The translations under genes were made by a program, and so were the position numbers. From Centroscyllium fabricii (lineage: Eukaryota), in the NCBI GenBank assembly GCA_051313645.2, contig JBNRSN020000023.1, forward strand, positions 4,340,001 through 4,404,000: DNA of 64,000 bases, given 5' to 3'. Within the stretch, counting starts at the first letter, position 1, and the number at the start of each line of letters is the position of its first letter. Below, piece after piece: positions 5,656-60,410 of the stretch. The notes beneath the pieces were generated by a model. It worked only from the letters and a program-made list of their open reading frames with translations. It was not told the origin of the DNA and did no database searches.

Positions 5656-5682
5656 GAATGACAATCCCCGAGAGCCAGTCAG

Positions 5683-5998
5683 ACTCTTTTATTTAAAACC
5701 CAATAGAAAAACACCATTATTTACAATATTTACAAAACAAAATAAAACCCCACATTACCGCGCTTGAGCCGCGGCAAACTCCCAAGCCCCAATGTCCACA
5801 AGGTAGGTGTCAAAGTTTCAAGCCCTCCTGCCTTCCTCAGACTCTTTTATTTAAAACCCAATTAAAAAACACCATTATTTACAATATTTACAAAACAAAA
5901 TAAAACCCCACATTACCGCGCTTGAGCCGCGGCAACTTCCCAAGCCCCAATGTCCACAAGGTAGGGGTCAAAGTTTCAAGCCCTCCTGCCTTCCTCAG
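5683..5998 (-). mobile_element. Two tandem 158-bp copies of the 3' terminus of the Tx1 element found at 19549-26906
   Basis: 5683-5840 and 5841-5998 are near-identical to each other, and each matches 19549-~19699 (ends AAATAAAAGAG on minus; TTGCCGCG..CGCGGTAA hairpin). Confidence 0.9.
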
Positions 5999-6563: not shown

Positions 6564-7303
6564 ATGCCAGCAGGGAGCCAAACAGCGCGACTCCACAGAC
6601 TGGGCCAGAACTACGGCCAAATACCAAACTTGCCAGAGTTCTGGGAACTACGTCCAGCGGCCTGGTTCCTCAGCACAGAGAACACCTACCGCATCCATGG
6701 TGTACAGGGGGACGATCGATATAGCCTGCTCTTCGCGGCCCTTTCACAGACCACGGTCGACCGAATGTGGTCATCGATACAGCACGAACCAACTGCTGGC
6801 AGGTACGAATCTCTTAAGGCCGCGCTGCTAAAAAAATTCACCCCCACCCAATTCGAGCGCGACTGCCAGCTCATTAACCTCCCCGAACTCGGGGACGCAG
6901 ACCCATCGGACCTCTGGGCCCAAATGGAAGCGCTCAATTGCGACCCGGCCACCATTAAGCGCGCCTTGTTCCTCCTCAAACTGCCCCCCTCCGTCAGACC
7001 GGCTCTGACAATCCTCGACCACTACACTAAAGAGCAACTGGCTGAGGAGGCCGACAAGCTGATGAGGGCCGAGCGCACCTGAGCCGCCACGTGCCAACCC
7101 ACGCCTGCTCCACCGGAGCAGTACTACGCGCACCCCAGGTCTGGCCCTAGGTCCGAACCCAGGCCAGTGCGTACCCGTAAAAAGCCACGCACCACAGGCC
7201 CCGGCTGGTGCTACTACCACACCAGGTTTGAAGCCAAAGCGCAGCGCTGCGTCCAGCCCTGCACCTTCAAACCCAAACCAGCCCAAGCCCCACCATGTCC
7301 GTA
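6564..7303 (+). pseudogene. Gypsy gag with in-frame TGA at 7080-7082
   Basis: LPEFW..PAAWF Gag motif. Reading through the TGA gives [19 protein letters not shown], the typical C-terminal Cys/His motif, then TAG at ~7303. Confidence 0.8.
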
Positions 7304-10300: not shown

Positions 10301-10389
10301 CAAAGCCCGCCCACACTCCCACGCAGAACAAGGAGCAGCGCACGACACGTGCTGGCCGCATCATCAGGCCACCTCAATGCCTCGCCTGA
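7295..10389 (+). pseudogene. Gypsy pol (protease CDTGA, RT YLDD, RNase H TDAS, integrase) with frameshift near 9650 and stop at 10042-10044
   Basis: ORF 7295-9853 diverges after FGVP. The integrase ([23 protein letters not shown]) continues in another frame through ORFs 9802-10044 and 10090-10389. Confidence 0.9.
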
Positions 10390-10804
10390 GACTCATCTTT
10401 TATGCTCCAATTTTTTATTTTTACTTTATGCTCCCTTCTACTTTAGGTTCAGCTTTATTCTCCCTCACAGATTCTGGGGGGGAGCTGTGTGGCGACACGC
10501 CCACCAGGACCATCGAATCCGCCTCAGGAGTACTGCGAGACGGCCCCGCCCACTGGGCGGCGTGACGACGTCACCGCGATTTCCGGCGTGATGACGTCGC
10601 CAGGTGGACACCCGGCAGTGACGTCACCAACCGCGGGTCCTTTAAATACGCTGGTTCCAGGTGGCTCAGCTTCTTCGCTACCTGGCCATAGTTGTGTTAA
10701 CATTAAATGATTGTTTTCCGAATTCACTGTGTCCAGCGTGGTTCTTCAGGCCTGCATGCTCTACAACACAATAGATTGAACCAGACTGACCTGCACCAGA
10801 CAGT

Positions 10805-15651: not shown

Positions 15652-19387
<3,736 letters not shown>

Positions 19388-19667
19388 CTTAACTCTTCCT
19401 GTTGATCAGCACTAAGCTCAAACTCCACTGTAACAACAACCTAACCTGTGCCTTCACAAGCTCCTTTATTTATACTAGTGGGACAGCCTGCATTTCAACA
19501 GGGTCTGGTATGACCAATGATGATTGACAATCCCCGATAACCAGTCAGACTCTTTTATTTAAAACTCAATAGAAAAACACCATTATTTACAATATTTACA
19601 AAACAAAATAAAACCCCACATTACCGCGCTTGAGCCGCGGCAAACTCCCAAGCCCCAATGTCCACAA

Positions 19668-19830
19668 GGTAGGGGTCAAAGTTTCAAGCCCTCCTGCCTA
19701 CGAGGCAGGGGGTCAAAGTCACAAGTCCATATGCCCGCAAGGCAGGGGTAAAAGTCACAAGCCCTCATGCCCGCAAGGCAGGGGTCAGTACCACGAGTCC
19801 TCATGGCCGCAGGCAGGGTCCAAATTTTCC
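19668..19830. repeat. ~36-bp minisatellite, ~4.5 diverged units, in the Tx1 3' UTR
   Basis: Units like gcaggggt(c/a)aaagtcacaagccctcatgcccgcaag. Confidence 0.8.
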
Positions 19831-20020
19831 AAGCTTTCTGGTCTTCGTCACCCGCCCATCCGGACAGCGGGTCTCCGGGAAAACACACAGATGAGGGTCG
19901 GCGCTCTCAGCGAATGGCTGGTGCAGATCCGGCAGTCTCCGGTTGTCGATCCACTCCATCTGCCGGGCCCTCCGCATCGCCGAGCGGATCCTCCCACTCT
20001 CCTGGACAAGCGGCCTGCAA
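19828..20020 (-). pseudogene. Processed (exon3-exon4 fused) ferritin-derived segment inside the Tx1 3' UTR
   Basis: Manual ungapped alignment of 19828-19980 to local ferritin exons 3+4 gives 114/153 nt identical. AMRRARQMEWIDNRRLPDLHQPFAESADPHLCVFPETRCPDGRVTKTRKLG vs [51 protein letters not shown]. Confidence 0.9.
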
Positions 20021-20057
20021 AGAAGACTCAGAAACACTTGATTAACATAATCAAAAC

Positions 20058-23000
20058 TTAAACTAAGATCACCCCGGCCGGGGTGACAATGCACTCCAGC
20101 CCCCGCGGTGCCCACCGGTCCCGAAAAAGTTCGAGCGTGCCGGTGGACACCGCGTGCTCCATCTCCAGGGCCACCCGGGCGCGAACATAGCCGCGGAAGA
20201 GAGGCAGGCAATCGGGCCGAACCACCCCCTCGACTGCCCTCTGCCTGTTCCTGTTAATGGCCACCTTGGCCAGGCCCAGAAGCAGTCCCACGAGGAGGTC
20301 TTCCGACCTGCCCTCTCCCCTCCGCACCGGGTGGCCGTAGATCAGGAGCGTGGGGCTGAAGTGCAGCCAAAAGTTGAGGAGCAGCCCCTTCAAATAATGA
20401 AACAGGGGGTGCAACCTTTCGCACTCACTGTAAATATGGAACACGGTCTCCTCCAGGCCACAAAAACAGCACTCAGCCTGGGAATCCGTGAACCTACTTA
20501 ATAACTTGTTGCACGGGACTGCTCCGTGCAACACCCTCCACGCCAAGTCCCCAATAAATAAAGGGAGGACACCCGCATAGAGGGCACCCCAATGGGGACC
20601 TCCGCCTCCGCCGGACGCCAAGATGGCATGCCAGGGCGTGTCCGGACGGCAGGCGAAGAGGGCAAAGTGGAAAGTGTGCAGGAGCAGCCCGTACAGGAAA
20701 CGCCTCCGCGCAGAAACAAAAGGCACGGAGGGCATTTCCCCGAGACGGCTCAGGTTGTGAGGCGCCGGTTCCCGAGAGGGGTTTCGGGGCTTTGCGCCAA
20801 TGAGGAATTCCGGCCGAACGGGGGTCAGTTCGGACGGGATCTCCCCACGTGCCTGAGCCTCCTCGATACACCTAGTGGAGTCGGGGCCCAGTGCTGCTTG
20901 CAGTATCACGATGGAGTCGGATGCGCGCTGGATACTGGTCCAGGAGAGGCGATGCGCCAATTCCTCCGGCGCCATCCAGCCCGCTCCTCCGCCATCGAGC
21001 AGGTCCCCGACCCTGGTCACCTTGCCGGCCACAGCCCTACCCTCCGCCAGCCGCCCACGCCAGGGATCGCGGAGGTGCGGATTCCTGAGCAGCGGCTCCC
21101 GAAGGAGGGCCGCCGCTCCTGACGGGGGAGAACTCCGCCTGGAGGCGACACTGTTCCAAACCCACAGTAGTTCCTGGTAGAAGACAGGCAGCTCCCGCAG
21201 GTAGGCTCGCGTATGGCCTAATTCCACAAACAGGAGCTGCGTGTCGTAGTTGAGGCCGTGCAGCTGGCGGAAGAAAAACGTCGCCAACGCACACCATCGA
21301 GGAGGATTCTCATCGTTCAGGTATCTCTGCAGGGCCTGTAGACGGAAAGTCGCCGCCTGGGTGCGCAGGCACACCAGCGCCTGACCGCCCTCCCTAAGCG
21401 GGAGACACAGAACCGCGGCAGAGACCCAGTGCTTCCTTTTGCCCCAGAAGAAGTCAATGAGCCTCTTCTGCATCTTGGCGACAAACGCAGGGGGCGGGAT
21501 CAAAGTGACCAACCGGTACCACAACATGGCGGCCACCAGCTGGTTTATGACCAGCGCTCGACCCCTGTAGGACAGCACTCGGAGCAGTCCTGTCCAGCGT
21601 CCTAGGCGAGTGGAGACTTTGGCGTCCAGCTCTTGCCAGTTCGCCGGCCAGGCGTCCTCGGCAGGGCTAAGGTAGACTCCCAAGTAGAGGAGGTGCGTGG
21701 TGCTCCAGGCAAAGGGCCTGAACTCCTCCGGCAGGGAGTCCACCTGCCACTGGCCCACCAGGAGCCCGGAACATTTCTCCCAGTTGAACCTGGCGGAGGA
21801 TGCGTCAGAGTAAATCTGCTGACATTCCCGCATCCTCCGCAGGTCAGCGGGATCCGTGACCATGAGGAGCACGTCATCGGCGTAAGCCGAGAGGACAACC
21901 TCCACGCCCGGCCCTTGCAGAGCCAGTCCCGTCAACCTCTTCCGCAAGAGGCGCAGGAAAGGCTCCACGCAGATGGCATATAACTGACCGGACATGGGGC
22001 ATCCCTGACGCACCCCCCTCCCAAAGCGAAGGGGCGCCGTCAAAGACCCGTTAACCTTTATCAGACACTCCGCGGCGGCATACAAAAGTCGGATCCGGGC
22101 GACGAAATGCGTCCCGAACCCGAATGCGCGCAGAGTTCCGAAAAGATAGTCGTGATCCACCCTGTCGAATGCCTTCTCCTGATCCAGGGAAAGGAAGGCG
22201 ACTGACAGACCAGCCCTCTGGGAATGGTGGAGCAGGTCCCGGACCAGATGGATGTTATCGTGGATTGTCCGGCCCGGGACCGTGTAGGACTGGTCGGGAT
22301 GGATCATGTGGGCCAGCACGGTGCCAAGGCGGACAGACATAGCCCTGGCAAAAATTTTGTAGTCCGTGCTGAGGAGGGACACCGGGCGCCAGTTCTTTAG
22401 TAGGCGGAGGTCGCCCTTCTTAGGCAGCAGGACGATGACCGCCCTGCGCCAAGAGAGAGGCATCTCCCCGGTCGCCAGACTTTCTCCCAGGACCCGCGCG
22501 TAGTCGCCCCCCAAGACGTCCCAGAACGCCCTGTGGAACTCCATGGTCAGCCCGTCCAGCCCCGGGGACTTTCCCCTCGAGAGCTGGCTAAGGGCGCCCG
22601 TCAGCTCCGCCAAGCTTAGCGGAGCATCCAACTGCTTGGCGCCCCCCGGGCTGACCTTCGGCAGGTCCTCCCACAAAACTCTGCACGCAACCTCGCTGGA
22701 CGGATCCGCAGAGAACAGATCCCCGTAAAAGGCCCGGGTCTCCGCGTTGATCCCCTCCGGATCCGAGACCAGGGATGCGTCGTGGGCCAGCAGCCCCAAG
22801 AGCTGCTTACGGACCCCCCGTCTTTTTTCCAGCGAGTAGAAGAAGGGGGAGCCACGGTCCAGGTCCCGAAGGAACCGGATCCGCGACCTGACGTACGCGC
22901 CTCGGGACCCAACGAGCTGCAGGTCCTTCAGCGCTTCCTTCTTCTCTTCGTACACCTTCCGCAGGGCCGGGTCGTCGACAGCCTGACCGAGACGGGACTC

Positions 23001-23957
23001 CAGGTCGAGCACCTCCTTCTCTAACCGCCCGACCCGGGCCTCCCGCCTCTTGGTCGACCCCCTCGCGTACTCCCGACAGAAGAGACGGACGTGAGCCTTG
23101 CCCACGTCCCACCATAGACTCAAGGAGGGGAAGCCCCCCTGCTTCCTTCTCCAGTCGGCCCAGAACCGACGGAACGAATCCCCGAACCGCACGTCCTCCA
23201 GCAGCAGGTTGTTAAAATGCCAGTACGCGGACCCCCCCCCTGCGCACAACCGAGTGAGCTCCGCCCACACCAGGTGGTGGTCCGTGCACGGCACCGGCCG
23301 CATGGAAGCCGCCGGAACGCAGGAGACGTACGCCCGGGAAATGTAGAGGCGGTCGATTCTGGAACCTCCTCCTCCAGACTGCACGTGAGTGAAGGCGCTG
23401 GAGTCGGGATGGAGATTTCGCCAGACGTCCACCAAGTCGAGGGACCCGACCAGGTCCGTCAACTCCTCCATTGCCGCCCGGCAATGCGGGGGGCCCGAAC
23501 GGTCCCTCGCCTCGAGGGAGCAATTAAAATCCCCCACGAGAATGACGCACTCGCCGACGTCGATGGAGCCCAGAAGAGCGGACACTTCTTCAAAGAAGCG
23601 CACTTGCTGCGCACCGGCCTGAGGGGCATACACGTTCACTAGATGGAGCGGCATGCCCCCCAGGCGTACAGTGACCTGGAGCAAGCGGCCCGGCATGAGC
23701 TCCTTGACCCCCAAGATCTCCGGCTGAAAATGCGGGGCCAGCAAGATGGCCACCCCACTGGAAACTTTGGAGAGGTGACTCATGTTGACCCCCCCTTGCC
23801 ACTCCAGGAGCCACGTGGCCTCGTCCTCCGGAACGGTGTGGGTTTCTTGCAGGAAGCACACCGCATACTTCCCGTCCCGAAGGACCGAGAAGATGTCAAA
23901 TCTACGGCGCGCATCTCTGCTGCCGTTGACGTTGAGGCTGGCTATGGTTGTCTTCAT
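20058..23957 (-). CDS. Tx1 ORF2 (APE endonuclease + reverse transcriptase + CCHC), 1299 aa, intact
   Basis: SLNVNG, FLQETH, GDFN, RIDR, TDHH (APE); KSPGLDG, WRPVSLL, LDQEKAFDRV, GVRQGCPMSG, YADD (RT); CCFC..H...C. DRGSPFFY and LVWAEL are Tx1-like. Confidence 0.96.
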   Translation of the reverse strand: MKTTIASLNVNGSRDARRRFDIFSVLRDGKYAVCFLQETHTVPEDEATWLLEWQGGVNMSHLSKVSSGVAILLAPHFQPEILGVKELMPGRLLQVTVRLGGMPLHLVNVYAPQAGAQQVRFFEEVSALLGSIDVGECVILVGDFNCSLEARDRSGPPHCRAAMEELTDLVGSLDLVDVWRNLHPDSSAFTHVQSGGGGSRIDRLYISRAYVSCVPAASMRPVPCTDHHLVWAELTRLCAGGGSAYWHFNNLLLEDVRFGDSFRRFWADWRRKQGGFPSLSLWWDVGKAHVRLFCREYARGSTKRREARVGRLEKEVLDLESRLGQAVDDPALRKVYEEKKEALKDLQLVGSRGAYVRSRIRFLRDLDRGSPFFYSLEKRRGVRKQLLGLLAHDASLVSDPEGINAETRAFYGDLFSADPSSEVACRVLWEDLPKVSPGGAKQLDAPLSLAELTGALSQLSRGKSPGLDGLTMEFHRAFWDVLGGDYARVLGESLATGEMPLSWRRAVIVLLPKKGDLRLLKNWRPVSLLSTDYKIFARAMSVRLGTVLAHMIHPDQSYTVPGRTIHDNIHLVRDLLHHSQRAGLSVAFLSLDQEKAFDRVDHDYLFGTLRAFGFGTHFVARIRLLYAAAECLIKVNGSLTAPLRFGRGVRQGCPMSGQLYAICVEPFLRLLRKRLTGLALQGPGVEVVLSAYADDVLLMVTDPADLRRMRECQQIYSDASSARFNWEKCSGLLVGQWQVDSLPEEFRPFAWSTTHLLYLGVYLSPAEDAWPANWQELDAKVSTRLGRWTGLLRVLSYRGRALVINQLVAAMLWYRLVTLIPPPAFVAKMQKRLIDFFWGKRKHWVSAAVLCLPLREGGQALVCLRTQAATFRLQALQRYLNDENPPRWCALATFFFRQLHGLNYDTQLLFVELGHTRAYLRELPVFYQELLWVWNSVASRRSSPPSGAAALLREPLLRNPHLRDPWRGRLAEGRAVAGKVTRVGDLLDGGGAGWMAPEELAHRLSWTSIQRASDSIVILQAALGPDSTRCIEEAQARGEIPSELTPVRPEFLIGAKPRNPSREPAPHNLSRLGEMPSVPFVSARRRFLYGLLLHTFHFALFACRPDTPWHAILASGGGGGPHWGALYAGVLPLFIGDLAWRVLHGAVPCNKLLSRFTDSQAECCFCGLEETVFHIYSECERLHPLFHYLKGLLLNFWLHFSPTLLIYGHPVRRGEGRSEDLLVGLLLGLAKVAINRNRQRAVEGVVRPDCLPLFRGYVRARVALEMEHAVSTGTLELFRDRWAPRGLECIVTPAGVILV

Positions 23958-23989
23958 TACAAGAGCACAGTCTAAACCTCTACCTAAAC

Positions 23990-26035
23990 CTAACAGGAGG
24001 AGGGAGCGCGGTCGCTAGTCGTCCGCCACTCCCTTTCCAGCCCAGCGAGGAACTTCTCGATCCGACGCTGCTCGGCCGGGCTCCCGCCCTCAGCCGCGCC
24101 CATTGTTTTGGCGACGGCGCGGACGGAATTAATGAGCAGCGCCAGATCCGTCCACCTTTCGAGGGCCAGCCAGACTATATCTTGGCGACCCCGGCACGTG
24201 GCGACAAAATCCCAGAGATCCAAAGCGGGGACGAGGGGGGACCCAGAGGGGGGCACAAGGACATCCACCGCCTCACTGGCGTCGGTCCAACTCGCTCTCC
24301 GTGTCCTCCGTCGGGTCCCCGTCCTCCTCCGAGAGGTCGTCGTCCGCCGGCCCCTCCTCTGTCCCGGTCCCACCCCCAGGATCGGCGGCAGAGGATTCCT
24401 CACCGGGCTCCTCCGGAGATGCCAGGTCAGGCGGCGGCGGCCCGGGGCCTCCCTCCGACCCAGGCACCGGGGCACACGGGGAAACAGGGGAGAATATTAT
24501 TCCCAGTTCCCCCCCCACCCGCGGCGCCGGAGACGGAGTCGGGGGGGCTTCCCCCTCATTGCCACCAACCACCGACCCAGCAGACTGGGAAGTATCAAGG
24601 AAAAAGTTGACTATGTCGAGCAGGTCCTGGGAGACGTCCTGACTGTTTTCCACGGCCTCAGCCTCAATGGCCTCACCCACCCCAGTCCCCAGGGCGCCAG
24701 ACATGGACTTATGTTCTATTGGCTTCGCGATCCCCCCCACGGCGAGCGGGGCCCTTTCCCCGCCCCCGGGAGGCACAGATCGGACAGACTCATCTGTCGT
24801 TTCCTCCCGAGGGACAGGCAACTCCCGCTGAACGCCGATAGTGGGGAGGGACTCGGCACCGACAACAGACGATGATACCCCTCGCGAGGTGGGACCCCGC
24901 CTCTCGCGGCGCCCTTCCTCATCCCCCAGTGAGTTACGCCTCCTTTTTAGTGTGGAGGATCTGGAGACCTCCATAATCTCCGAGGCCTCCCCCTCCGTTC
25001 CCTCCTGCCGAGTGGGAGGCTTCTTGGATCCCTCGAGCCCTGGCCCGACCGCAGGCGTTGATTCGTCCGCTTCGGCGGTTGCGGTCATGAGCCCGGACAC
25101 TAGACCCCCCCCAGTCCCAGTCTCGGCAAGAAACTCTGCAAGAAATGTCTCTGAGATGGCTGGGAAGTCATCAATATCAGTCGACTCGCCCTGGGGAGCC
25201 GCCCGAAGGTGTTTTTTCTTCCTCCGCGCCTTCCTTCCAGTCGGACGCTCCCCCCACCCCCGTCGGAGGCCGCGACAGCGACAGCGTCGACCACTGCCAT
25301 CGACCGCGCATCAGGTGTCGTTGGCACGTTGACAGAAACGGTGGGAGGTGCGGCGGCGCCAGCCTGAGATGTTTTAGCGGCCTTGGAGGCGGGGCAGTTC
25401 TTTCTTATGTGCCCCACCTCTTTACAGGCGTGGCACCGCACTTCGTCCGAGCTCCAGAATATCCGATAGGTGGTCCCCTCATAACTGACACCAAACGCAC
25501 CCTCGGTGACCTCCTCCCGCGCCAACTGAAGGAAGAGCTGGCGCCGGAAGGAGAAGACGTGCCGGAGGCTGGCCTCCCTGCAGCCGAGCGGAATGGGCAC
25601 GATCCCCGACCTTACCTCCCCCAGGTGACGTAAATGGGGGAGGAGGAGCTCAACCGGAACAAAGGGCGGGACATTGGACAATACAATCCTCTGCGCGGTG
25701 GCCCCAAGAGGATCCACCGGCACGAAGGTCCCGCCCACGGTGAGCCCCTTGGTTATTGCCAGGTGGACCGCCCGCTCTGACCGCAGGAAGAACACAGCCT
25801 TCCCTTGCATTTTTGAGGCGGCGACGATGGCTGAAGGGCCGACCACTTCAGCCATGGCCTTTACGCACGCCTCAATGCTCATAGTGGGGTGAGCATAACA
25901 CTTAACCCCGTGTTTCCTGGTTATAAGGCGAAACGGTGATGGGGCAGCAAAACCAGCGGAAGGAGCTGTGGCCTTAGCTGCCACACTCGCATATGGTCTC
26001 GCTGACCCCGCCACCATTGATGGTAAACTCGCCAT
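23990..26035 (-). pseudogene. Tx1 ORF1 (zinc knuckle) broken by two frameshifts
   Basis: ORF pieces 25100-26035 (CHACKEVGHIRKNC), 24273-25100 and 23990-24475 together align with the single ORF1 at 53599-55743. Shifts fall near 25255 and 24285. Confidence 0.85.
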
Positions 26036-27090
26036 CGTGAGGGGGGGTGCTTATCGCACAGGGCTACGCTCCCGCCCCCCCCCAGTCACAGGCCTGCTGA
26101 TGGTAATAACGGCCTCTGTGGGTTTTATTTTGCTGGAGCAGAGGGAGCTTGGAAGGCCCTCCCTGGTGATGGTAAATAGGAGAGGGCCCTTCTCCCCTCC
26201 GCTCAATTGACACTTAAATCACAGAGTCTATGAAGTGCCCCTTTAAGAGACAGGCAGAGAGAGAGAGAGCAAGGGGCTGGGTCTCCACTCAAGGTGGTGG
26301 GTGGGTGTTTGCAGGGGTGCACTCTCTACTACAAACACAAAGTCTTTGATGGTCTTCTCGTGGGGGGAGAAGATGTCTTCACCTGGGAAACTGCTGAAGC
26401 TGCTCAGGCTTTAGTCCACCACCAGGTCTTAAACAAAACTTAATTGGGTGATATCTTCTCCTGGGCAGCTCCAGCTGTCCCAGGTCAAGCAATAGGGAAG
26501 GGTGTTTGTTAGTGGTGTGTGGGGCCTAGTTGTTGCATAAACCACACACACTCACACACACCCCTAGATGTTCTGTCACCCTCTTCTTTCCTCCCCCCAC
26601 TTAAACACAAAACCTTAAACACAAAGTCTCTGTGAGAGTGCACCTTTACACCAACCTGTCGATGTTTCCAATGACTCTCCCTCTTTCTGAACAGATGTAG
26701 GTTGTTCTTTTCCTCTTCTCTCTCTCTCCCTCCTGTAGTGGAGTCCAGTTGGGGAAGCAGTGCTGGAATAGCTTCCCTGTTGTTCCTTCTGGTCTCCCGG
26801 TCTCTCCTCTGGCACTCCAAAGGCTCACTGCTGCAGCAAAACACAGACTTCTCCTCTCCCTTCTCCACTGCAAAAAGACACAACCTCCTCTCAGCTGGCC
26901 AGACTCGTCAGGATCTTCCATGAATCCAGGCACCAATTAACAAAGGAGAGGGGGGTGGGGTTTGAGATACCCAGAGCCAATCAGAGCTTTGGAATACAGA
27001 GGTTTGGATGATGATTTTATGATGTCATTGCTGTTGGATTCTTTAACTTTGCTCAAATTGATCGGAAAGTGCCTCTTCTCTTTTGGTTAA

Positions 27091-52304: not shown

Positions 52305-53598
52305 CTTAACTCTTCCTGTAGCTCAGCAATAAATTCAAACTCCACTGTAACAACAACAACAACCTAACCTCTGTCCTCACAAGCTCCTGTATTTATACTA
52401 GTGGGACAGCCTGCATTTCAACAGGGTCTGGTATCATCAATGATGATTGACAATCCCTGGGAGCCAGTCAGGATCTTCCATGAATCCAGGCACCAATTAA
52501 CAAAGGAGAGGGGGAGGGGTTTGAGATACCAAGAGCCAATCAGAGCTTTGGAATACAGAGGTTTGGATGATGATTTTATGATGTCATTGCTGTTGGATTC
52601 TTTAATTTTGCTCAAATTGATCGGAAAGTCCCTCTTCTCTTTAGGTTAATACTTTGCCAAGAGCTGGGCAGCTGAGAGGAGGTCTTTTTGCAGTGGAGAA
52701 GGGAGAGGAGAAGTCTGTGTTTTGCTGCAGCAGTGAGCCTTTGGAGTGCCAGAGGAGAGACTGGGAGACCAGAAGGAACAACAGGGAAGCTATTCCAGCA
52801 CTGCTTTCCCCAACTGGACTCCACTACAGGAGGGAGAGAGAGAGAAGAGGAAAAAGAACAACCTACATCTGTTCAGAAAGAGGGAGAGTCATTGGAAACA
52901 TCGACAGGTTGGTGTAAAGGTGCACTCTCACAGAGACTTTGTGTTAAAGGTTTTGTGTTTAAGTGGGGAGAGGAAAGAAGAGGGTGACAGAACATCTAGG
53001 GGTGTGTGTGAGTGTGTGTGGTTTATGCAACAACTAGGCCCCACACACCACTAAAAGCACCCCTTCTATTGCCTGGCCTGGGACAGCTGGAGCTGCCTAG
53101 GTGAAGTCTCTTTGATTAATTAAACATCGTTAAGACCTGGTGAGAAGGACTGAGCCTGGGCTTCTCCAGCTGTTCCAGGTGAAGACATCTTCTCCCCCCA
53201 CCAGAAGACCATCATCAACATCTACAGACTTTGTAAATTTCCAGCGGAGGGTGCACCCCCACCTGTCAACACCCACCCACCCATCCATCCTGAGTGGTGA
53301 CCCAACTCTTGTGGTCTCCCTCCTTCCCACCACCCCTCTCTCTCTCTCTCTCTCTCTCTCTGCCTCTTTCCCTAGAGGCACCTCAAGCATATTATTTCTT
53401 TCATTTTTCTCTATTGCCAATTGAGCAGAGGGGAGAAGGCCCCTCCCCCTTCTGTCATCAAGGGGAGGGGTGTGTCTTTATTTAATCACTCCCCACCCCC
53501 CTCTGCTCAAGAGGAAAATCAAAACCTGAGGCCATTCTTCATCTTAAGGCCTGTGACTTGGGGTGAGCGTGGCTCCAAAAACCCCCCCACCTGGTAGC

Positions 53599-55743
53599 AT
53601 GGCGACACCATCTTCGCCGGTGGCGGGGACATCGGGAACGTATGCGGCCGTGGCATCCGCTGCCAAGACCACGGCTGCTCCTGATGCCCCGTCACCATTC
53701 CGGCTGCTGACAAGGAAGCTGGGGGTGAGGAGCTACGCTCACCCATCTATGACAATAGAGGCATGCGTCAAGGCCATGGCTGGGGTGGTCGGCCCCTCAG
53801 CCATCGTCGCGGCCTCTAAAATGTACGGGAAGGCTGTGTTCTTCCTCAAATCCGAGCGGGCGGCGGCCCTGGCCATTGAACAAGGGCTCACCGTGGGCGG
53901 CACCTTCCTGACGGTGGACCCTCTTGAGGCCGCCGGGCAGAGGGTGGTCCTATCAAACATCCCGCCCTATATTCCCGGTGAGCTCCTCCTCCCCCACCTA
54001 CGCAAACTTGGGGAGGTGAGGTCAGGGATATCGCCCATCCCGCTCGGGTTCCGGGAGGCCAGCCTTCGCCACGTCTTCTCCTTCCGGCGTCAGCTGTTTA
54101 TGCAGCTGGCGCGGGAGGAGGACACTGATGGCGCGTTCCTCGTGCTGCACCAGGGGACCGCCTACCGCGTCTTCTGGACGACGGACGGCGTGCGGTGCCA
54201 TTTCTGTAAGGAGGTGGGGCATATCAGAAAGAACTGCCCCGCCTCCAAGGCCGCCAATAATAGTGCGGCCAAAAAGGGCACCGGCGCCACTCCTCCCCCA
54301 GAGTCAGACCGCGCGTCTCGGAAGTCGGGCGCGCGGGAGTTGCCGGAGGCCAATGTCATCACGGCCTCCGGCGGGGGGGAGCAAACGTGTCCACACACAA
54401 AGAGGGCGCGGATTAAATCAAAACAAAGGAGGGAGGGTCCCCTGGTTGGGGATGCCCAACTGTCAGACCTGCCAGATATAACACCCGAGTACCTCGAAAA
54501 TGGGCAGGTTCAAGATGGGAGCAAGGAGGGCCCCGAGTCTGAGCCTGCGGCCGCCACTGCTACGGCAGAAAATTTAACATCTGCGGCAGGGCTCGGAAAA
54601 GAGGGGCCCGAAATAACTATTCAGCCGGGGGGAACGGAGGAGGGGGTGGCCTTAGGAGAGATGGAGGTCGCCCCCCCTCAGGGTCCCCTCAGCGGAAAAA
54701 GGAAGCACGACTTCGACTCCCAGGATCAGCAGGGGGGCCGTGATCATGAGGGCGGTCCCCCCGAGGGAGCGGAGTCGTCATGCTCCGCGCCCCCTCCCAA
54801 AATCATTATAGTCGCCAAAGACGGGCAGGAGTCGCCTGTCTTGCGGGAGAGTGGGGCGGAGGAGATTGTCCTGCCCGCGGCTCCCGGGGATGGGGATCTG
54901 GCCCTGCCCGCGGGAGGGGACGCGGATCAACCTGAACAACATGTAGACCCTCAGGGGGAAAAAAAAAGTTGCCTCGGTGGGTCGAGCGTGCTGGAGGAGG
55001 GCGAGGTCGAAGGGTTAGACCCCGCCCAAGACACAACCATGACTATCCAGCATATACTCAGCTTCATCGAGGATTGTGGCCAGGGTAACCTACAGGCTGG
55101 GTCAGTGGTTGGTGGCGGGGAGGGTGACGGCTCACTCACCCCTCCCTCGACATTGGCGTCGGACGCACAGGAGAGCGTGGAATTTGAATATATCCCCGTC
55201 TCTCCGTGCTCTCTGGCGCCTGAGGAGGAGGGGAGCCCCGAGCTGCTGCCTTCCTCTGGCCTGGCACCCCGGGTGGAGCCCAGGGAGGACTCCTCTGCCA
55301 TCGATCCTGGGGGTGGGATCGAGACAGAGGCAGGGTCGGACGGTGCAGCCGGGCCGTCAGTCGCGTTCTGCGCGGCTGATGGAGTGGACGCCGGTGGTAA
55401 CCTTCCGGAGGGGGACGGGGACTCGGAGTGGGACGAGGAGCTGGAGTCCATCGCCGATGAGGCGGCGGACGACCCCGAGCCCTCCGCTGAGTCTCCTCTC
55501 GTCCTCGTGGCGGAGCTCCGGAAATTTATGGCCACGCACCCGGGTCGCAAAAAAATGGTCCATAAGGCCATCGAAAAGTGGCCGGAGCTGGCGCCGCTCA
55601 TTTCGTCCGTTCGCGGCGCCATTAAAACCTTGGCCGCGGACAAAGGTGACAATGACATCGAGCTGCGCCGGCTCCAAAAGTTCCTCACTGGGCTGCGGAG
55701 GAAGAGGCGTGAGTCCAAGGACTGCGCTCCTTCCTCCCGATAG
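53599..55743 (+). CDS. Tx1 ORF1 (nucleic-acid-binding, CCHC zinc knuckle), ~714 aa
   Basis: First ATG at 53599 (MATPSSPVAG); AIVAASKM, LSNIPP, LRHVFSFRRQ, CHFCKEVGHIRKNC; long acidic low-complexity linker. Confidence 0.92.
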   Translation: MATPSSPVAGTSGTYAAVASAAKTTAAPDAPSPFRLLTRKLGVRSYAHPSMTIEACVKAMAGVVGPSAIVAASKMYGKAVFFLKSERAAALAIEQGLTVGGTFLTVDPLEAAGQRVVLSNIPPYIPGELLLPHLRKLGEVRSGISPIPLGFREASLRHVFSFRRQLFMQLAREEDTDGAFLVLHQGTAYRVFWTTDGVRCHFCKEVGHIRKNCPASKAANNSAAKKGTGATPPPESDRASRKSGARELPEANVITASGGGEQTCPHTKRARIKSKQRREGPLVGDAQLSDLPDITPEYLENGQVQDGSKEGPESEPAAATATAENLTSAAGLGKEGPEITIQPGGTEEGVALGEMEVAPPQGPLSGKRKHDFDSQDQQGGRDHEGGPPEGAESSCSAPPPKIIIVAKDGQESPVLRESGAEEIVLPAAPGDGDLALPAGGDADQPEQHVDPQGEKKSCLGGSSVLEEGEVEGLDPAQDTTMTIQHILSFIEDCGQGNLQAGSVVGGGEGDGSLTPPSTLASDAQESVEFEYIPVSPCSLAPEEEGSPELLPSSGLAPRVEPREDSSAIDPGGGIETEAGSDGAAGPSVAFCAADGVDAGGNLPEGDGDSEWDEELESIADEAADDPEPSAESPLVLVAELRKFMATHPGRKKMVHKAIEKWPELAPLISSVRGAIKTLAADKGDNDIELRRLQKFLTGLRRKRRESKDCAPSSR

Positions 55744-55768
55744 AGAAAATTAGTATTGTGCTACTGAC

Positions 55769-58700
55769 ATGAAGATAACCATAGCTAGCCTCAACATCAA
55801 CGGCAGCAGGGAGGCACGCCGTAGATTTAACAATTTCTCGGTCCTTCGGGACGGGAAGTATGCGGTGTGCTTCCTGCAAGAAACCCACACCGTTCCGGGA
55901 GACGAGGCCACGTGGCTCCTGGAGTGGCAAGGAGGGGTCAGCATGAGTCACCTCTCCAATTTGTCCAGCGGGGTGGCTATCTTGCTGGCCCCACATTTTC
56001 AGCCGGAGATCTTGAGGGTCAAGGAGCACGTGCCGGGCCGCTTGCTCCAGGTCACTGTTCGTCACGGGGGCGTGCCGCTCCATCTTGTGAACATGTACGC
56101 CCCTAAGTTCGGTGCGCAGCAAGTTGGCTTCTTTGAAGAAGTGTCCGCTCTTCTGAGCTCTATCGATGGCGGAGAGTGCATCATCCTCGGGGGGGATTTC
56201 AATTGTACCCTCGAGGCGAGGGACCATTCGGGTCGCCCGGACAGCTCGGCATCGGCAGAGAAGTTGAGGGACCTGGTCGGGTCCTTCGACTTGGTGGACG
56301 TCTGGCGAAATCTCCATCCCGACTCGAGCGCCTTCACCTATGTGAGGTCTGGAGGAGGAGGCTCCCGAATCGACCGCCTCTACATTTCTCGGGCGTACGT
56401 CTCCTGTGTTCGGGCGGCTTCCATGCGGCCGGTGCCGTGCACGGACCACCACCTGGTGTGGACAGAGCTCACTCTGTTGCGCGCGCGGGGGGGGTCCGCG
56501 TACTGGCATTTTAACAACCTGCTGCTGGAGGACGCGCGATTCCGGGATTCGTTCCGTCGGTTCTGGGCCGACTGGAGAAGGAAGCAGGGGGGCTTCCCCT
56601 CCTTGAGGCTATGGTGGGACGTGGGCAAGGCTCACGTCCGTCTCTTCTGTCAGGAGTACGCGAGGGGGTCGACCAAGGGGCGGAAAGCTCAGGTCGAGCG
56701 ATTAGAGAAGGAAGTGCTCGACCTAGAGTCCGGCCTTGGTCAGGTCGTCGGGGACCCGGCCCTGCGGACAGTGTACGAAGAAAAGAAGGCCGCGCTGAAG
56801 GACCTGCAGCTCGTCGGGTCCCGAGGCGCGTTCGTGAGGTCGCGTATCCAGTTCCTGCGGGATCTGGACCGCGGCTCCCCCTTCTTCTACTCGCTGGAAA
56901 AAAGGCGAGGGGTCCGTAAGCAGCTCTTGATGCTGCTGGCCGACGACGGATCTCTGGTCTCGGATCCGGAGGGGATCAGTGCGGAGACCCGGTCCTTTTA
57001 CGGGTCTCTGTTCTCTCCGGATCCGTCCAGCGAGGATGCACGTAGAGTTTTGTGGGAGGACCTGCCAAGGGTCAGTCCGGAGGGCGCCGAACAATTGGAC
57101 GCTCCGCTAAGTCAGGCGGAGCTGACCGGCGCCCTCGGCAAGCTCTCGAGGGGAAAGTCCCCGGGGCTGGACGGGCTGACCGTGGAGTTCCACAGGGCGT
57201 TCTGGGACGTCCTGGGGGGCGATTACCAGCGGGTCCTGGGGGAAAGTATGGCGACCGGGGAGATGCCCCTCTCGTGGCGCAGGGCCGTCATTGTCCTGCT
57301 GCCAAAGAGGGGTGATCTCCGCCTCCTTAAAAACTGGCGCCCGGTCTCCCTCCTCAGCACGGATTACAAAATTTTTGCCAGGGCCATGTCTGCCCGCCTT
57401 GGCACCGTGCTGGCCCACATGATCCATCCCGACCAGTCCTACACGGTCCCGGGCCGGTCAATCCACGACAACGTCCATCTGGTCCGGGACCTGCTCCACC
57501 ATTCCCAGAGGGCTGGCATGTCGGTCGCCTTCCTTTCCCTGGACCAGGAGAAGGCGTTCGACAGGGTGGATCACGAGTACCTTTTCGGGACTCTGCGCGC
57601 ATTCGGGTTCGGGACGCATTTCGTCGCCCGGATCCGACTTTTGTACGCTGCCGCAGAGTGTCTGATTAAAGTTAACGGGTCTTTGACGGCGCCCCTTCGC
57701 TTTGGGAGGGGGGTACGTCAGGGATGCCCCATGTCCGGTCAGTTATATGCCATTTGCGTGGAGCCTTTCCTGCGCCTCTTGCGGAAGAGGTTGACGGGAC
57801 TGGCTCTGCAAGGGCCGGGCGTGGAGGTTGTCCTCTCGGCTTACGCCGATGACGTGCTCCTCATGGTCACGGACCCCGCTGACCTGCGGAGGATGCGAGA
57901 ATGCCAGCAGATTTACTCGGACGCATCCTCCGCCAGGATCAACTGGGAGAAATGTTCCGGACTCCTGGTGGGGCAGTGGCAGGTGGACTCCCTGCCGGAG
58001 GAGTTCAGGCCTTTCGCCTGGAGCACCACGCACCTCCTCTACTTGGGAGTCCACCTCAGCCCAGCCGAGGAAGCCTGGCCGGCGAACTGGCAAGAGCTGG
58101 AGGCCAAAGTCACCGTTCGCCTAGGGCGCTGGACAGGACTGCTCCGAGTGTTGTCCTACAGGGGTCGAGCGCTAGTCATAAACCAGCTGGTGGCCGCCAT
58201 GTTGTGGTACCGGTTGGTCACTTTGATCCCTCCCCCTGGTTTTGTCGCCAGGATACAGAGGAAGCTCATCGACTTCTTCTGGGACAAAAGGAAGCACTGG
58301 GTCTCTGCCGCGGTTCTGTGTCTCCCGCTTGGGGAGGGCGGTCAGGCGCTGGTGTGCCTCCGCACCCAGGCGGCGACTTTCCGTCTACAGACGCTGCAGA
58401 GATACCTGTACGTTGAGGATCCTCCTAGATGGTGTGCGATGGCGACGTATTTCTTCCGCCAGTTGCATGGCCTCAACTATGACACGCAGCTCCTGTTTGT
58501 GAGAGTGGGCGCTACACGTGCCAGCTTTCGGGAGCTGCCTGTCTTTTACCAGGAACTGCTATGGGTTTGGAACAGCGTCGCCTCCAGGCGCACCTCTCTT
58601 CCGTCAGGAGTGGCGGCTCTCCTTCGAGAGCCGCTGCTCAGGAATCCGCACCTCCGCGACCGAGGGTTCGGGTGGCTGACGGAACACAGAGCTGTGCGTG

Positions 58701-59668
58701 GCAGGGTGACTATAGTCAGGGACCTGCTTGATGGCGGAGGAGCGGGCTGGATGGCGCCAGAGGAGCTGGCGCAGCGTCTGGGCCATGATAATGGCCGGCT
58801 CGCGGCCAAAGCCATCGAGTCGCTGAAAGTGGCGTTGGGCCCTGGCTACACAAAGAAAATTGAGGCGGCTCAAAGAAGTGGGGTGCTCCCGTCCGAGCTG
58901 ACCCCCGTTCGGACGGAATTCCTCATCGGCGCCCGGCCCCAAAACCCCTCTCGGGGACCGGCGCCTCACAACTTGAGCCGTCTCGGTGAGATGCCCTCCG
59001 TGCCTTTTGACACCGCACGGAGGCGTTTCCTGTACGGGCTGCTCCTGCACACTCTCCACTTTGTCATCTTCGCCTGCCGCCCGGACACGCCCTGGCGTGC
59101 CATCTTGCCGTCCGGCGGAGGCGGAGGTCCCCAATGGGGGGCTCTCTATGCGGGAGTCTTCCCCTGTTATATCGGGGACTTGGCCTGGAGAGTGTTGCAC
59201 GGAGTAGCCCCGTGCAACAAAATTTTAAGTCGGTTCACGGACTCCCAGGCCACCTGTCATTTCTGCGGCCTGGAAGAGTCCGTGTTCCATGTTTATGTGG
59301 AATGTGGGAGGTTGCAGCCCCTTTATCATTACTTGAAGGGGCTGCTCCTCAAATTTTGGCTGCACTTCAGTCCCACGCTCCTGATCTACGGCCATCCGGT
59401 GCGGAGGGGAGCGGGCAGGTTGGAGGATCTCCTCGTCGGTCTGCTCCTGGGACTTGCCAAAAGGTCCATCTACTCGTCCAGGCAGCGGGCCGTTGAGGGG
59501 GCCATCCAGCCAGATTGCCTGCCTCTCTTTCGCGGCCAGGTTCGCGCCCGGGTGGCCCTGGAGATGGAGCACGCGGTGTCCGACGGTACGCTTGAGGCTT
59601 TTCGCGACCGTTGGGCGCCGGGGGGACTGGAGTGCATCGTCACCCCGGTCAACCAAATTTTAATTTAA
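55769..59668 (+). CDS. Tx1 ORF2 (APE-RT-CCHC), 1299 aa, intact
   Basis: Same APE/RT/zinc motifs as 20058-23957 and co-linear with it. Confidence 0.96.
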   Translation: MKITIASLNINGSREARRRFNNFSVLRDGKYAVCFLQETHTVPGDEATWLLEWQGGVSMSHLSNLSSGVAILLAPHFQPEILRVKEHVPGRLLQVTVRHGGVPLHLVNMYAPKFGAQQVGFFEEVSALLSSIDGGECIILGGDFNCTLEARDHSGRPDSSASAEKLRDLVGSFDLVDVWRNLHPDSSAFTYVRSGGGGSRIDRLYISRAYVSCVRAASMRPVPCTDHHLVWTELTLLRARGGSAYWHFNNLLLEDARFRDSFRRFWADWRRKQGGFPSLRLWWDVGKAHVRLFCQEYARGSTKGRKAQVERLEKEVLDLESGLGQVVGDPALRTVYEEKKAALKDLQLVGSRGAFVRSRIQFLRDLDRGSPFFYSLEKRRGVRKQLLMLLADDGSLVSDPEGISAETRSFYGSLFSPDPSSEDARRVLWEDLPRVSPEGAEQLDAPLSQAELTGALGKLSRGKSPGLDGLTVEFHRAFWDVLGGDYQRVLGESMATGEMPLSWRRAVIVLLPKRGDLRLLKNWRPVSLLSTDYKIFARAMSARLGTVLAHMIHPDQSYTVPGRSIHDNVHLVRDLLHHSQRAGMSVAFLSLDQEKAFDRVDHEYLFGTLRAFGFGTHFVARIRLLYAAAECLIKVNGSLTAPLRFGRGVRQGCPMSGQLYAICVEPFLRLLRKRLTGLALQGPGVEVVLSAYADDVLLMVTDPADLRRMRECQQIYSDASSARINWEKCSGLLVGQWQVDSLPEEFRPFAWSTTHLLYLGVHLSPAEEAWPANWQELEAKVTVRLGRWTGLLRVLSYRGRALVINQLVAAMLWYRLVTLIPPPGFVARIQRKLIDFFWDKRKHWVSAAVLCLPLGEGGQALVCLRTQAATFRLQTLQRYLYVEDPPRWCAMATYFFRQLHGLNYDTQLLFVRVGATRASFRELPVFYQELLWVWNSVASRRTSLPSGVAALLREPLLRNPHLRDRGFGWLTEHRAVRGRVTIVRDLLDGGGAGWMAPEELAQRLGHDNGRLAAKAIESLKVALGPGYTKKIEAAQRSGVLPSELTPVRTEFLIGARPQNPSRGPAPHNLSRLGEMPSVPFDTARRRFLYGLLLHTLHFVIFACRPDTPWRAILPSGGGGGPQWGALYAGVFPCYIGDLAWRVLHGVAPCNKILSRFTDSQATCHFCGLEESVFHVYVECGRLQPLYHYLKGLLLKFWLHFSPTLLIYGHPVRRGAGRLEDLLVGLLLGLAKRSIYSSRQRAVEGAIQPDCLPLFRGQVRARVALEMEHAVSDGTLEAFRDRWAPGGLECIVTPVNQILI

Positions 59669-60374
59669 TTTGCTAAGGGTTAATTGGATTTTTGTTTACA
59701 GATAAACTATATAACGGTGCATCAAAAGAGGAGAGGAGGTCTTTTTGCAGTGGAGAAGGGAGAGGAGAAGTCTGTGTTTTGCTGCAGCAGTGAGCCTTTT
59801 GGAGTGCCAGAGGAGAGACCAGAAGGAACAACAGGGAAGCTATTCCAGCACTGCTTCCCCAACTGGACTCCACTACAGGAGGGAGAGAGAGAGAGAAGAG
59901 GAAAAGAGCAACCTACATCTGTTCAGAAAGAGGGAGAGTCATTGGAAACATCGACAGGTTGGTGTAAAGGTGCACTCTCACAGAGACTTTGTGTTAAAGG
60001 TTTTGTGTTTAAGTGGGGAGAGGAAAGAAGAGGGTGACAGAACATCTAGGGGTGTGTGTGAGTGTGTGTGGCTTTGCTAAAACTAGGCCACGCACACCAC
60101 TAAAAGCACCCCTTCTATTGCCTGGCCTGGGACAGCTGGAGCTGCCTAGGTGAAGTCTCTTTGATTAATTAAACATCGTTAAGACCTGGTGAGAAGGACT
60201 GAGCCTGGGCTTCTCCAGCTGTTCCAGGTGAAGACATCTTCTCCCCCCACCAGAAGACCATCATCAACAGACTTTGTAAATTTCCAGCGGAGGGTGCACC
60301 CCCACCTGTCAACACCCACCCACCCATCCATCCTGAGTGGTGACCCAACTCTTGTGGTCTCCCACCTTCCCACC

Positions 60375-60410
<36 letters not shown>

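What the first reader, a model, noticed from the sequence alone, without database searches (positions are those of the whole stretch)
19828..20020. Tx1 retrotransposon in a ferritin promoter carries a spliced ferritin mRNA fragment in its own 3' UTR
Seen: between the ORF2 stop (20058) and the element's 3' end (19549), 153 nt align without gaps to ferritin exon 3 (70/90 nt) and exon 4 (44/63 nt). The segment is in the same sense as the element, and the exon3/exon4 junction is fused (GAC CCT CAT|CTG TGT, DPH|LC; no intron 3). Homology probably extends upstream (GAG TGG GAG GAT CCG CTC ~ EW..GL, and GTCTTCTTTGCAGG ~ 'VFLQD' or an intron-2 acceptor). Substitutions are often non-synonymous and mostly toward G/C, like the element body, so it looks like long-resident non-coding UTR rather than a fresh processed pseudogene. 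The local ferritin exons differ from each other far less. 'ET' instead of the local 'ES' hints that the donor was another paralog. Inference: an ancestor sitting co-oriented upstream of a ferritin gene read through, spliced and 3'-transduced host exons, then kept them. The element RNA could then base-pair with ferritin loci, or feed small-RNA or regulatory crosstalk. I know of no described ferritin-carrying Tx1 family.
Basis: partly seen in the sequence, partly recalled or inferred. Interest (0 to 1): 0.92.

Follow-up and report, generated by a model that had tools for sequence, protein, structure and literature searches.

The report
Ferritin mRNA fragment inside a LINE tail
A jumping gene of the Tx1 type carries, in its non-coding tail, a decayed piece of spliced ferritin messenger RNA that many of its copies seem to share, so it is a rare vertebrate example of a mobile element capturing and spreading host exons, probably without any present function.

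Summary
Window 20004-19828 (minus strand) lies in the 3' UTR of a full-length Tx1-clade LINE (19549-26906). It aligns to ferritin exon 3 (68-72 of 93 nt gapless) and to the start of exon 4 (42-45 of 63 nt) of six tandem ferritin genes. The two parts are fused exactly at the splice junction. All six genes have a 743-1636 nt GT..AG intron there.

The segment lies inside the element's target-site duplication, so it arrived by retrotransposition. Contigs of two public runs cover it in many variant forms (23 and 12 contigs, against 1 on the promoter flank), and some bridge it to the tail repeats. This points to a subfamily-wide feature, not a one-off. An 86%-identical sister element in the window lacks it.

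The segment evolves neutrally: 28 nonsynonymous against 3 synonymous codon changes, with GC and CpG content raised to the element's level.

Simple 3' transduction fits poorly, because the piece is internal and is followed by the element's own tail. The supposed extension into exon 2 or intron 2 is not significant. Small-RNA crosstalk is unlikely at 67-77% identity.

Two independent insertions sit at the same nucleotide of two ferritin promoters, which suggests a target motif there.

Closest known cases: host gene capture by Drosophila TART and other telomeric LINEs.

The parts
19549..26906 (-). Element E1: full-length Tx1-clade LINE, 7358 nt, inserted in the promoter of ferritin gene c2
   Evidence: Flanks align to the uninterrupted promoters of c3, c5 and c6, whose two alignments overlap by about 11 nt; c4 has a deletion at the site
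26907..26911 (-). 5' copy of the target-site duplication CTGAC
   Evidence: Read directly; the empty site reads AGATCCTGAC^TGG
19544..19548 (-). 3' copy of the target-site duplication CTGAC
   Evidence: Read directly. The element end plus flank, AGAGTCTGACTGG, matches the empty sites at 11 of 13
20058..23957 (-). ORF2, 1299 aa, intact: endonuclease + reverse transcriptase + weak zf-RVT
   Evidence: 86% aa identity, no gaps, to ORF2 of E2
24273..26035 (-). ORF1 region, in two ORFs (311 aa with a CCHC knuckle, and 275 aa) where E2 has one ORF of 726 aa. Probably disrupted in this copy
20005..20057 (-). 3' UTR head between the stop codon and the ferritin-like segment. No significant similarity to ferritin exon 2, intron 2 or the E2 UTR
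19891..20004 (-). Ferritin exon-3-like part (exon 3 positions 10-126)
19828..19890 (-). Ferritin exon-4-like part (exon 4 positions 1-63), fused to the exon-3-like part without intron 3
19641..19818 (-). About 4 copies of a 36-nt tandem repeat in the 3' UTR
   Evidence: The repeat number varies between copies (joints)
19549..19699 (-). Terminal tail with AATAAA, ending ...AAAAGAGT. It is also found alone as insertions
5679..5991 (-). Two tandem tail-only copies (about 155 nt each, 96-97% identical to the E1 tail) at the same promoter nucleotide of ferritin gene c1, with the native upstream ~150 nt lost
15655..19387 (-). Ferritin gene c2 downstream of E1: ATG at 19387, exon 2 18517-18371, exon 3 17560-17435, exon 4 coding 15798-15655. 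TATA at about 19474
52664..59730 (+). Element E2, a sister subfamily, head-to-tail with E3 (from 59731). Its 3' UTR is about 62 nt and has no ferritin-like segment

Best explanation
The segment is a fossil of host-exon capture. It is now a passive passenger in the 3' UTR of one subfamily of a Tx1-clade LINE.

Shown: the piece derives from a spliced ferritin transcript (exon 3 joined to exon 4). It lies inside the element between its target-site duplications. It is non-coding and has drifted to the element's GC/CpG-rich composition. Many variant copies in public runs cover it.

[quoted passage not shown] My preferred acquisition path (about 50%) starts from a copy sitting co-oriented just upstream of a ferritin gene, as E1 does now. 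This is expected because the promoter holds a motif (AGATCCTGAC^TGG) that resembles the element's own 3' end. Such a copy produced a read-through, spliced chimeric RNA. The element's own tail was then retained or regained by RT template switching or recombination, and internal deletions removed the rest.

Direct template switching of the RT onto abundant ferritin mRNA and back (about 35%) and a DNA-level event (about 15%) are not excluded.

I expect no present function for the segment itself. The insertion separates the CCAAT and GC boxes of gene c2 from its TATA box by 7.36 kb.
For: Homology and the fused junction.

Inside the element, with a TSD and empty sites at c3, c5 and c6.

Multi-copy (contigs at >=85% identity). 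At 19850, inside the exon-4-like part, 23 contigs (run X16) and 12 contigs (X1) carry the other letter. At 20014, 20025 and 20031 the counts are 15, 12, 9 (X16) and 7, 7, 7 (X1). Each variant position of the promoter flank (19448-19466) has 1 contig per run. Contigs with joints 19786->19828 (1 each in X16 and X1) and 19786->19857 (X16) link the tail repeats to the ferritin-like part in other copies. X1 record 2 spans 19985-20150 at 89% identity. Summed word depth in the ferritin-like bins is 110-255 times that of the flank bin (the tool warns that depth is not copy number).

Neutral decay: 28 nonsynonymous against 3 synonymous codon differences of 52, no Pfam hit, fold z-score -0.98.

Tail sufficiency and site preference: tail-only copies sit at the same nucleotide in c1. 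c1 is sister to the empty c5 and c2 is sister to the empty c6.

Precedent for LINE 3' UTR gene capture: PMC7785250 and PMC13534243 (passages).
Against: No complete second copy carrying the segment could be read. The only other full elements in the window (E2, E3) lack it. Two metagenome scans and one protein search for other copies found nothing.

The evidence from runs consists of short contigs. The tool itself says depth cannot rank parts of a gene. Runs X16 and X1 may come from the same or closely related species, and one may be the source sample.

In X1 the UTR-head bins are about 4 times shallower than the ferritin-like bins, so many copies may be 5'-truncated or may have a different head.

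The read-through path needs several extra steps: loss of exons 1-2, truncation in exon 4, and retention of the tail.

Homology of the E2 UTR to the E1 tail is only marginal (45 of 1000 shuffles).

Run X10 (organism B) has abundant ORF2 contigs, none on the tail, and low depth on the ferritin-like bins. I cannot explain this.
Confidence: 0.78

Rival explanations
1. One-off event: a ferritin retrocopy fragment or a template-switch chimera present only in this copy (or a handful of copies) of the element.
For: No second full copy with the segment was seen. E2 and E3 lack it. Searches for other copies in metagenome contigs and the protein set were blank.
Against: Dozens of distinct contigs cover the segment in two runs, against one on the flank. 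Some contigs bridge the segment to the tail repeats with different indels. 22-33% divergence and full compositional assimilation do not fit an event in a copy young enough to have an intact ORF2 and TSD. There is no A-run or TSD around 19828-20004.
Confidence: 0.07
2. The multi-copy unit is mainly a separate non-autonomous retroposon (ferritin-like piece + 36-nt repeats + Tx1 tail) that borrows the Tx1 tail. E1 would then be a recombinant between the autonomous element and that retroposon.
For: Tail-only copies exist (5679-5991). Depth rises from the UTR head to the tail in both runs. In X1 the head is about 4 times shallower than the ferritin-like bins.
Against: A 3'-to-5' decline is what ordinary 5' truncation of a LINE gives. 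X1 record 2 joins the ORF2 end to the start of the ferritin-like part in a diverged copy. In X16 the head and ferritin-like bins are similar (42-46k against 52k).
Confidence: 0.1
3. Chance or convergent similarity, or an assembly chimera with the neighbouring ferritin genes.
For: The protein-level signal is weak: no Pfam hit and E 3e-4 in the large library.
Against: blastn E 3e-16 for the exon-3 part against all six genes. The two parts are collinear and abut exactly at the splice junction. A chimera would be near-identical to the local exons, not 22-33% diverged. The segment is also found in other runs.
Confidence: 0.01

Closest known systems
Host gene capture by Drosophila telomeric LINEs (TART-A/nxf2; piwi, aub and others)
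   Same: An autonomous non-LTR element carries a fragment of a host gene transcript in its UTR. The fragment is present in the family's copies, and transduction was proposed as the origin (PMC7785250 and PMC13534243, passages read).
   Different: Those are Jockey-clade telomere elements of insects. Their captured genes belong to the piRNA pathway, identity is mostly about 90%, and antisense piRNAs hit the host gene. Here the host is a vertebrate and the element a Tx1-clade LINE. The gene is ferritin, identity is 67-77% with clear neutral decay, and there are no small-RNA data. The passages I read do not say whether those captures span splice junctions ('spliced' and 'intron' occur 0 times in PMC13534243).
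SVA_F1 (MAST2 exon 1) and chimpanzee pt_SVA_D6 (STK40 exon 1)
   Same: A retrotransposon subfamily acquired a host exon through splicing of a chimeric transcript and then amplified (84 and 94 copies; PMC6139936, passages).
   Different: Those are non-autonomous composite elements. The exon is at the 5' end and serves as a promoter. Here the element is autonomous and the exons sit in the 3' UTR.
L1 3' transduction (recalled: Moran et al. 1999; not read here)
   Same: Read-through of a LINE's own poly(A) signal can carry downstream host sequence to new sites.
   Different: Transduced DNA lies beyond the element's own 3' end, is usually unspliced flank, and ends in a new poly(A). Here the piece is internal, spliced, and followed by the element's tail.
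Xenopus Tx1L and other target-specific Tx1-clade LINEs
   Same: ORF2 architecture, and 49% identity over the full length to the Tx1 149 kDa protein. There are signs of target-specific insertion and head-to-tail arrays. Target specificity of the clade is stated in PMC4640811 (one passage).
   Different: No described Tx1 family with host exons was found in my searches. The target here looks like a short motif in a gene promoter, not a repetitive gene or transposon.

Membership tests
Tx1 clade of L1-like non-LTR retrotransposons | N-terminal apurinic-type endonuclease plus reverse transcriptase in ORF2 | tested here: met
   Pfam Exo_endo_phos (residues 6-227, E 1e-13) and RVT_1 (512-761, E 8e-37)
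Tx1 clade of L1-like non-LTR retrotransposons | Closest named relative is a Tx1 element | tested here: met
   49% identity over 100% of the query to the Xenopus laevis Transposon TX1 149 kDa protein. No phylogeny with other L1 clades was built.
Tx1 clade of L1-like non-LTR retrotransposons | C-terminal zinc-binding motif in ORF2 and a CCHC knuckle in ORF1 | tested here: inconclusive
   zf-RVT 23.3 bits (cut-off 27.5); zf-CCHC 20.5 bits (cut-off 20.8)
Tx1 clade of L1-like non-LTR retrotransposons | Target-sequence-specific insertion | tested here: inconclusive
   Two insertions at the same nucleotide of non-sister ferritin promoters. The element's 3' end resembles the target at 11 of 13 positions. 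Only two sites were seen.
LINE gene capture (TART-like) | Host-transcript-derived sequence inside the element's UTR | tested here: met
LINE gene capture (TART-like) | Carried by the copies of the (sub)family, not by one insertion | tested here: met
   23 and 12 contigs at 19850 against 1 on the flank, plus bridging contigs. 'All copies' could not be tested.
LINE gene capture (TART-like) | Element-derived small RNAs target the host gene | not testable with these tools
   No small-RNA data. The longest exact match is 11 nt.
Classical 3' transduction | Captured DNA lies downstream of the element's own 3' end and carries the new poly(A) end | tested here: not met
   The segment is followed by 36-nt repeats and the element's tail. 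The rest of the UTR is unlike ferritin exon 4 / 3' UTR (219 of 500 shuffles score as well).
Processed pseudogene nested in the element | Own poly(A) tract and TSD; includes the mRNA 3' end | tested here: not met
   There is no A-run or direct repeat around 19828-20004. The fragment stops at exon 4 position 63.

The most novel reading that the evidence does not exclude
This Tx1 subfamily homes to a motif in ferritin promoters (AGATCCTGAC^TGG, mimicked by its own 3' end). On this reading the ferritin exons in its UTR record a long-standing association. Copies repeatedly land co-oriented just upstream of ferritin start sites. They generate element-ferritin read-through transcripts, and these could both seed new exon captures and alter ferritin expression in a tandem gene array.
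Probability: 0.15. Interest if true: 0.7.

Novelty: new member of a known kind. Interest (0 to 1): 0.5.

Why it matters
Autonomous LINE subfamilies that carry and amplify spliced host exons are rarely documented. The clear cases I found in print are Drosophila telomeric elements. A vertebrate Tx1-clade example would show that such capture is more general. It would provide a dated marker for subfamily history in cartilaginous-fish-like genomes. It would also warn annotators that ferritin-like hits scattered over the genome can be LINE tails. The repeated insertion at one nucleotide of ferritin promoters gives a testable handle on Tx1 target choice, and on how a LINE next to a highly expressed gene picks up its exons.

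Tried and rejected
Extension of homology into exon 2 or the intron-2 acceptor: rejected as within chance.

Homology of the 36-nt repeats and tail to the rest of ferritin exon 4 / 3' UTR: none.

A conserved RNA structure in the UTR: z-score -0.98. Rfam gave only one sub-threshold chance hit and no IRE in 19200-20100.

Other copies in JGI metagenome contigs: 0 hits in two scans.

Other copies through a 143-aa antisense ORF spanning the UTR: no protein hit (a blank there says little).

Shared ancestry or gene conversion between the c1 and c2 insertions: not favoured. c1 pairs with the empty c5 and c2 with the empty c6 along the whole unit. The 5' junctions also differ.

A bacterial promoter/terminator scan was irrelevant to this eukaryotic sequence.

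Literature searches for a ferritin-carrying Tx1 or LINE listed nothing relevant. Repbase and Dfam could not be consulted, and supplementary files were not opened; Supplemental Table S6 of PMC13534243 may bear on the identity threshold I quote.

I built no consensus of the element. I did not search with a joined exon model: the local exons were searched one by one.

Full report
SETTING. The window holds six tandem ferritin genes on the minus strand, here called c1 to c6 from low to high coordinates. Their exon 3 copies lie near 3564, 17525, 30691, 37492, 44165 and 50481, and their exon 4 copies near 2675, 15797, 29856, 36655, 43294 and 49171. For gene c2 the four exons are open. Exons 2, 3 and 4, searched separately, match Pfam Ferritin PF00210 with E 3.7e-11, 6e-5 and 0.015. 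I did not search a joined exon model. Pairwise identity over about 4.3 kb groups the units as c1~c5 (85%), c2~c6 (95%) and c3~c4 (92%). The same pairs hold in 200-column windows.

THE ELEMENT. Between the upstream region and the promoter of c2 lies a 7358-nt insertion, 26906 to 19549 on the minus strand. Its flanks align to the uninterrupted promoters of c3, c5 and c6. In those units the site reads AGATCCTGAC^TGG. c4 has a deletion at the site. In c2 the pentamer CTGAC stands on both sides of the insertion, at 26911-26907 and 19548-19544.

ORF2 (23957-20058, 1299 aa) is intact. It has Exo_endo_phos and RVT_1 domains and a sub-threshold zf-RVT match. It is 49% identical over its full length to the Xenopus laevis Tx1 149 kDa protein. 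The best partial matches (69-70%) are to proteins annotated in a stingray and a horn shark.

ORF1 is in two ORFs of 311 and 275 aa, where the sister element has one ORF of 726 aa. This copy is probably not autonomous.

The 3' end lies 75 nt upstream of the TATA box of c2, co-oriented with the gene.

THE OBSERVATION. After the ORF2 stop come four parts:
- about 53 nt with no significant similarity to anything tested;
- 20004-19891, which aligns to exon 3 positions 10-126;
- 19890-19828, which aligns to exon 4 positions 1-63;
- about four 36-nt tandem repeats at 19818-19641, then an AT-rich tail with AATAAA ending at 19549.

Gapless identity is 68-72 of 93 for exon 3 and 42-45 of 63 for exon 4, across the six genes. 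In-window blastn E-values are 3e-16 to 2e-11 for exon 3. For exon 4 they are 8e-4 for the three best copies and 0.01 to 5 for the other three.

The two parts abut at ...GACCCTCAT|CTGTGTG. All six genes have a GT..AG intron of 743-1636 nt at that point. The source was therefore a spliced RNA.

At the protein level the signal is nearly gone. The 53-aa translation has no Pfam hit. In a 1.84-billion-protein library it gave 2 hits at E<=0.001: a collinear match to a ferritin-like protein (E 3e-4, residues 2-52) and a spurious repeat protein.

Of the 52 codons compared, 28 differ nonsynonymously and 3 synonymously. Substitutions run AT>GC 27, GC>AT 9, other 7. GC is 63%, as in ORF2, against 52% in the ferritin exons. 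CpG count is 15 against 2.

145 of 2000 and 137 of 2000 shuffles score as well.

ONE-OFF OR FAMILY FEATURE? Inside the window, the sister elements E2 (52664-59730) and E3 (from 59731) stand head to tail. E2 is 86% identical to E1 in ORF2 protein. It has a 3' UTR of only about 62 nt with no ferritin-like piece. The segment is therefore at most subfamily-specific.

For other copies I laid Logan contigs of four coded runs on 19300-21300 at >=85% identity. The tool warns that depth is per contig and is not a copy number, so I rely mainly on contig counts.
- At 19850, inside the exon-4-like part, 23 contigs in X16 and 12 in X1 carry the alternative letter.
- At 20014, 20025 and 20031, in the UTR head, the counts are 15, 12, 9 (X16) and 7, 7, 7 (X1).
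- At the promoter-flank positions 19448-19466 there is 1 contig per run.
- Contigs with joints 19786->19828 (one each in X16 and X1) and 19786->19857 (X16) connect the tail repeats to the ferritin-like part with other indels.
- X1 record 2 (164 nt, 18 differences, 2 gaps) spans 19985-20150, from the ORF2 end to the start of the ferritin-like part.

Summed word depth in the bins 19836-19969 is 85,000 and 51,800 in X16, against 333 in the flank bin. In X1 it is 3,155 and 2,823 against 25.7.

The local ferritin genes are only 67-77% identical to the segment, so they cannot supply these contigs at the 85% cut.

Three results count against a simple picture. In X1 the head bins (824 and 679) are about 4 times shallower than the ferritin-like bins. 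X10 (organism B) has very many ORF2 contigs, none on the tail (19568-19835), and low depth on the ferritin-like bins (1,223, 509, 252), which I cannot explain. X20 (18 contigs laid) covers the tail and ORF2 but not the segment, and it is too small to weigh.

No complete second copy was readable. Two metagenome scans and a protein search with an antisense ORF spanning the UTR were blank.

I conclude, at about 0.8, that the segment is carried by many copies of one subfamily.

HOW IT GOT THERE. Simple 3' transduction predicts host sequence beyond the element's own 3' end, finishing in the host poly(A) site. Here the piece is internal. About 280 nt follow it, and these are unlike the rest of ferritin exon 4 / 3' UTR (219 of 500 shuffles score as well).

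The last ~155 nt occur alone, twice in tandem, in the promoter of c1 (5679-5991, 96-97% identity). The tail therefore behaves as the part sufficient for insertion.

E2's short UTR aligns best to E1's terminal tail (19616-19578), but only marginally (45 of 1000 shuffles). If that homology is real, the ferritin piece and the repeats lie inside an ancestral short UTR.

Exons 1-2, the first 9 nt of exon 3 and everything after exon 4 position 63 are missing. A read-through, spliced chimeric RNA therefore needs further steps: exon skipping or deletion, then retention or recovery of the tail by RT template switching. That last step resembles the recalled model of retroviral oncogene capture. Direct double template switching onto ferritin mRNA is the main alternative. 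I rate these two paths about 50:35, with about 15% for a DNA-level event. None of this is shown.

The c1 tail-only insertion and E1 have their 3' junction at the same nucleotide (AGAGTCTGAC^TGG in both). Yet c1 and c2 are not sister units, and their sisters c5 and c6 are empty.

The 5' junctions also differ. E1 keeps the native upstream 200 nt and has a TSD. In c1 the native ~150 nt between CAGTCTGAGGAA and the site (present in c5) are lost. The unit [GGAA + tail] is duplicated between two AGTCTGA heptamers.

Two independent insertions at one nucleotide fit the target specificity reported for the Tx1 clade (PMC4640811, one passage). The element's 3' end matches the target at 11 of 13 positions, which suggests priming by annealing.

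If the motif sits in ferritin promoters, co-oriented copies immediately upstream of ferritin start sites are recurrent. Here 2 of 6 promoters are occupied. This gives repeated opportunity for read-through into ferritin. The argument is circumstantial, since only two sites were seen.

WHAT IT DOES NOW. Probably nothing. The segment is under no coding constraint. The whole UTR folds no better than shuffles (z -0.98; 14 of 100 shuffles fold at least as well). There is no Rfam match of note.

The segment is in sense orientation, is 67-77% identical to the local ferritin exons, and has exact runs of at most 11 nt. In Drosophila, captured fragments at about 79-82% identity gave almost no piRNAs on the host gene (PMC13534243, passages).

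For the host, E1 moves the CCAAT-like and GC-rich boxes upstream of 26907 (seen; I name them from recall) 7.36 kb away from the c2 TATA box.

COMPARISON AND NOVELTY. The closest known kind is gene capture by Drosophila telomeric LINEs. TART-A carries nxf2 sequence in its 3' UTR in all copies, and transduction was proposed as the origin (PMC7785250, passages). Nine independent captures are reported across drosophilids (PMC13534243, passages).

SVA_F1 and pt_SVA_D6 are subfamilies founded by splicing-mediated exon acquisition at the 5' end (PMC6139936, passages).

L1 3' transduction is recalled, not read here.

My searches for a ferritin-carrying Tx1 or LINE returned nothing relevant. Repbase and Dfam were not available, so 'undescribed' rests on those three searches only.

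I file the finding as a new member of a known kind: a vertebrate, Tx1-clade instance of LINE host-exon capture, old and decayed, with a spliced two-exon fragment.

VERDICT. Interest is 0.5: real, tidy and uncommon, but likely functionless and with clear precedents. The site-specific landing in ferritin promoters is the part most worth following up.

Noticed in passing
window 5679-5991: Two tandem ~155-nt tail-only copies of the E1-type element sit at exactly the same promoter nucleotide of ferritin gene c1. The native upstream ~150 nt are lost. The duplication is bounded by AGTCTGA heptamers.
   Followed up: yes
window 6188-10765: LTR retrotransposon on the plus strand with 278-nt LTRs, 96% identical. 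It has an 852-aa pol ORF with RT, RNase H and integrase domains. It is inserted upstream of ferritin c1.
   Followed up: partly
window 52664-64000: Head-to-tail array of a sister Tx1 subfamily (E2, then E3 from 59731) on the plus strand. It abuts the upstream region of ferritin c6 about 190 nt from the E1-type target site. ORF1 (726 aa) and ORF2 (1299 aa) are intact in E2.
   Followed up: partly
window 27607-27252, 34182-33841, 40726-40583: An old fragment of Tx1 ORF2 (75-83% identical to E1) lies in the upstream region of several ferritin units, on the same strand as the genes. Tx1 insertion near these genes therefore predates the array's duplications.
   Followed up: partly
window 15655-19387 (gene c2): The ferritin gene behind E1 has private amino-acid differences from the other copies, seen in exon 1 (QVRQNY against QVCQNY) and exon 4. 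This could reflect relaxed constraint after its promoter was split. Not tested.
   Followed up: no
window 19387-19460: Rfam found no iron-responsive element in the c2 5' UTR at E<=1, although a CAGTGG motif is present. Whether these ferritin genes have an IRE was not pursued.
   Followed up: no
run X10 (organism B) on window 19568-20036: This relative has abundant ORF2 contigs, no contigs on the E1 tail, and low depth on the ferritin-like bins. The ferritin-like piece may exist there in another context.
   Followed up: no
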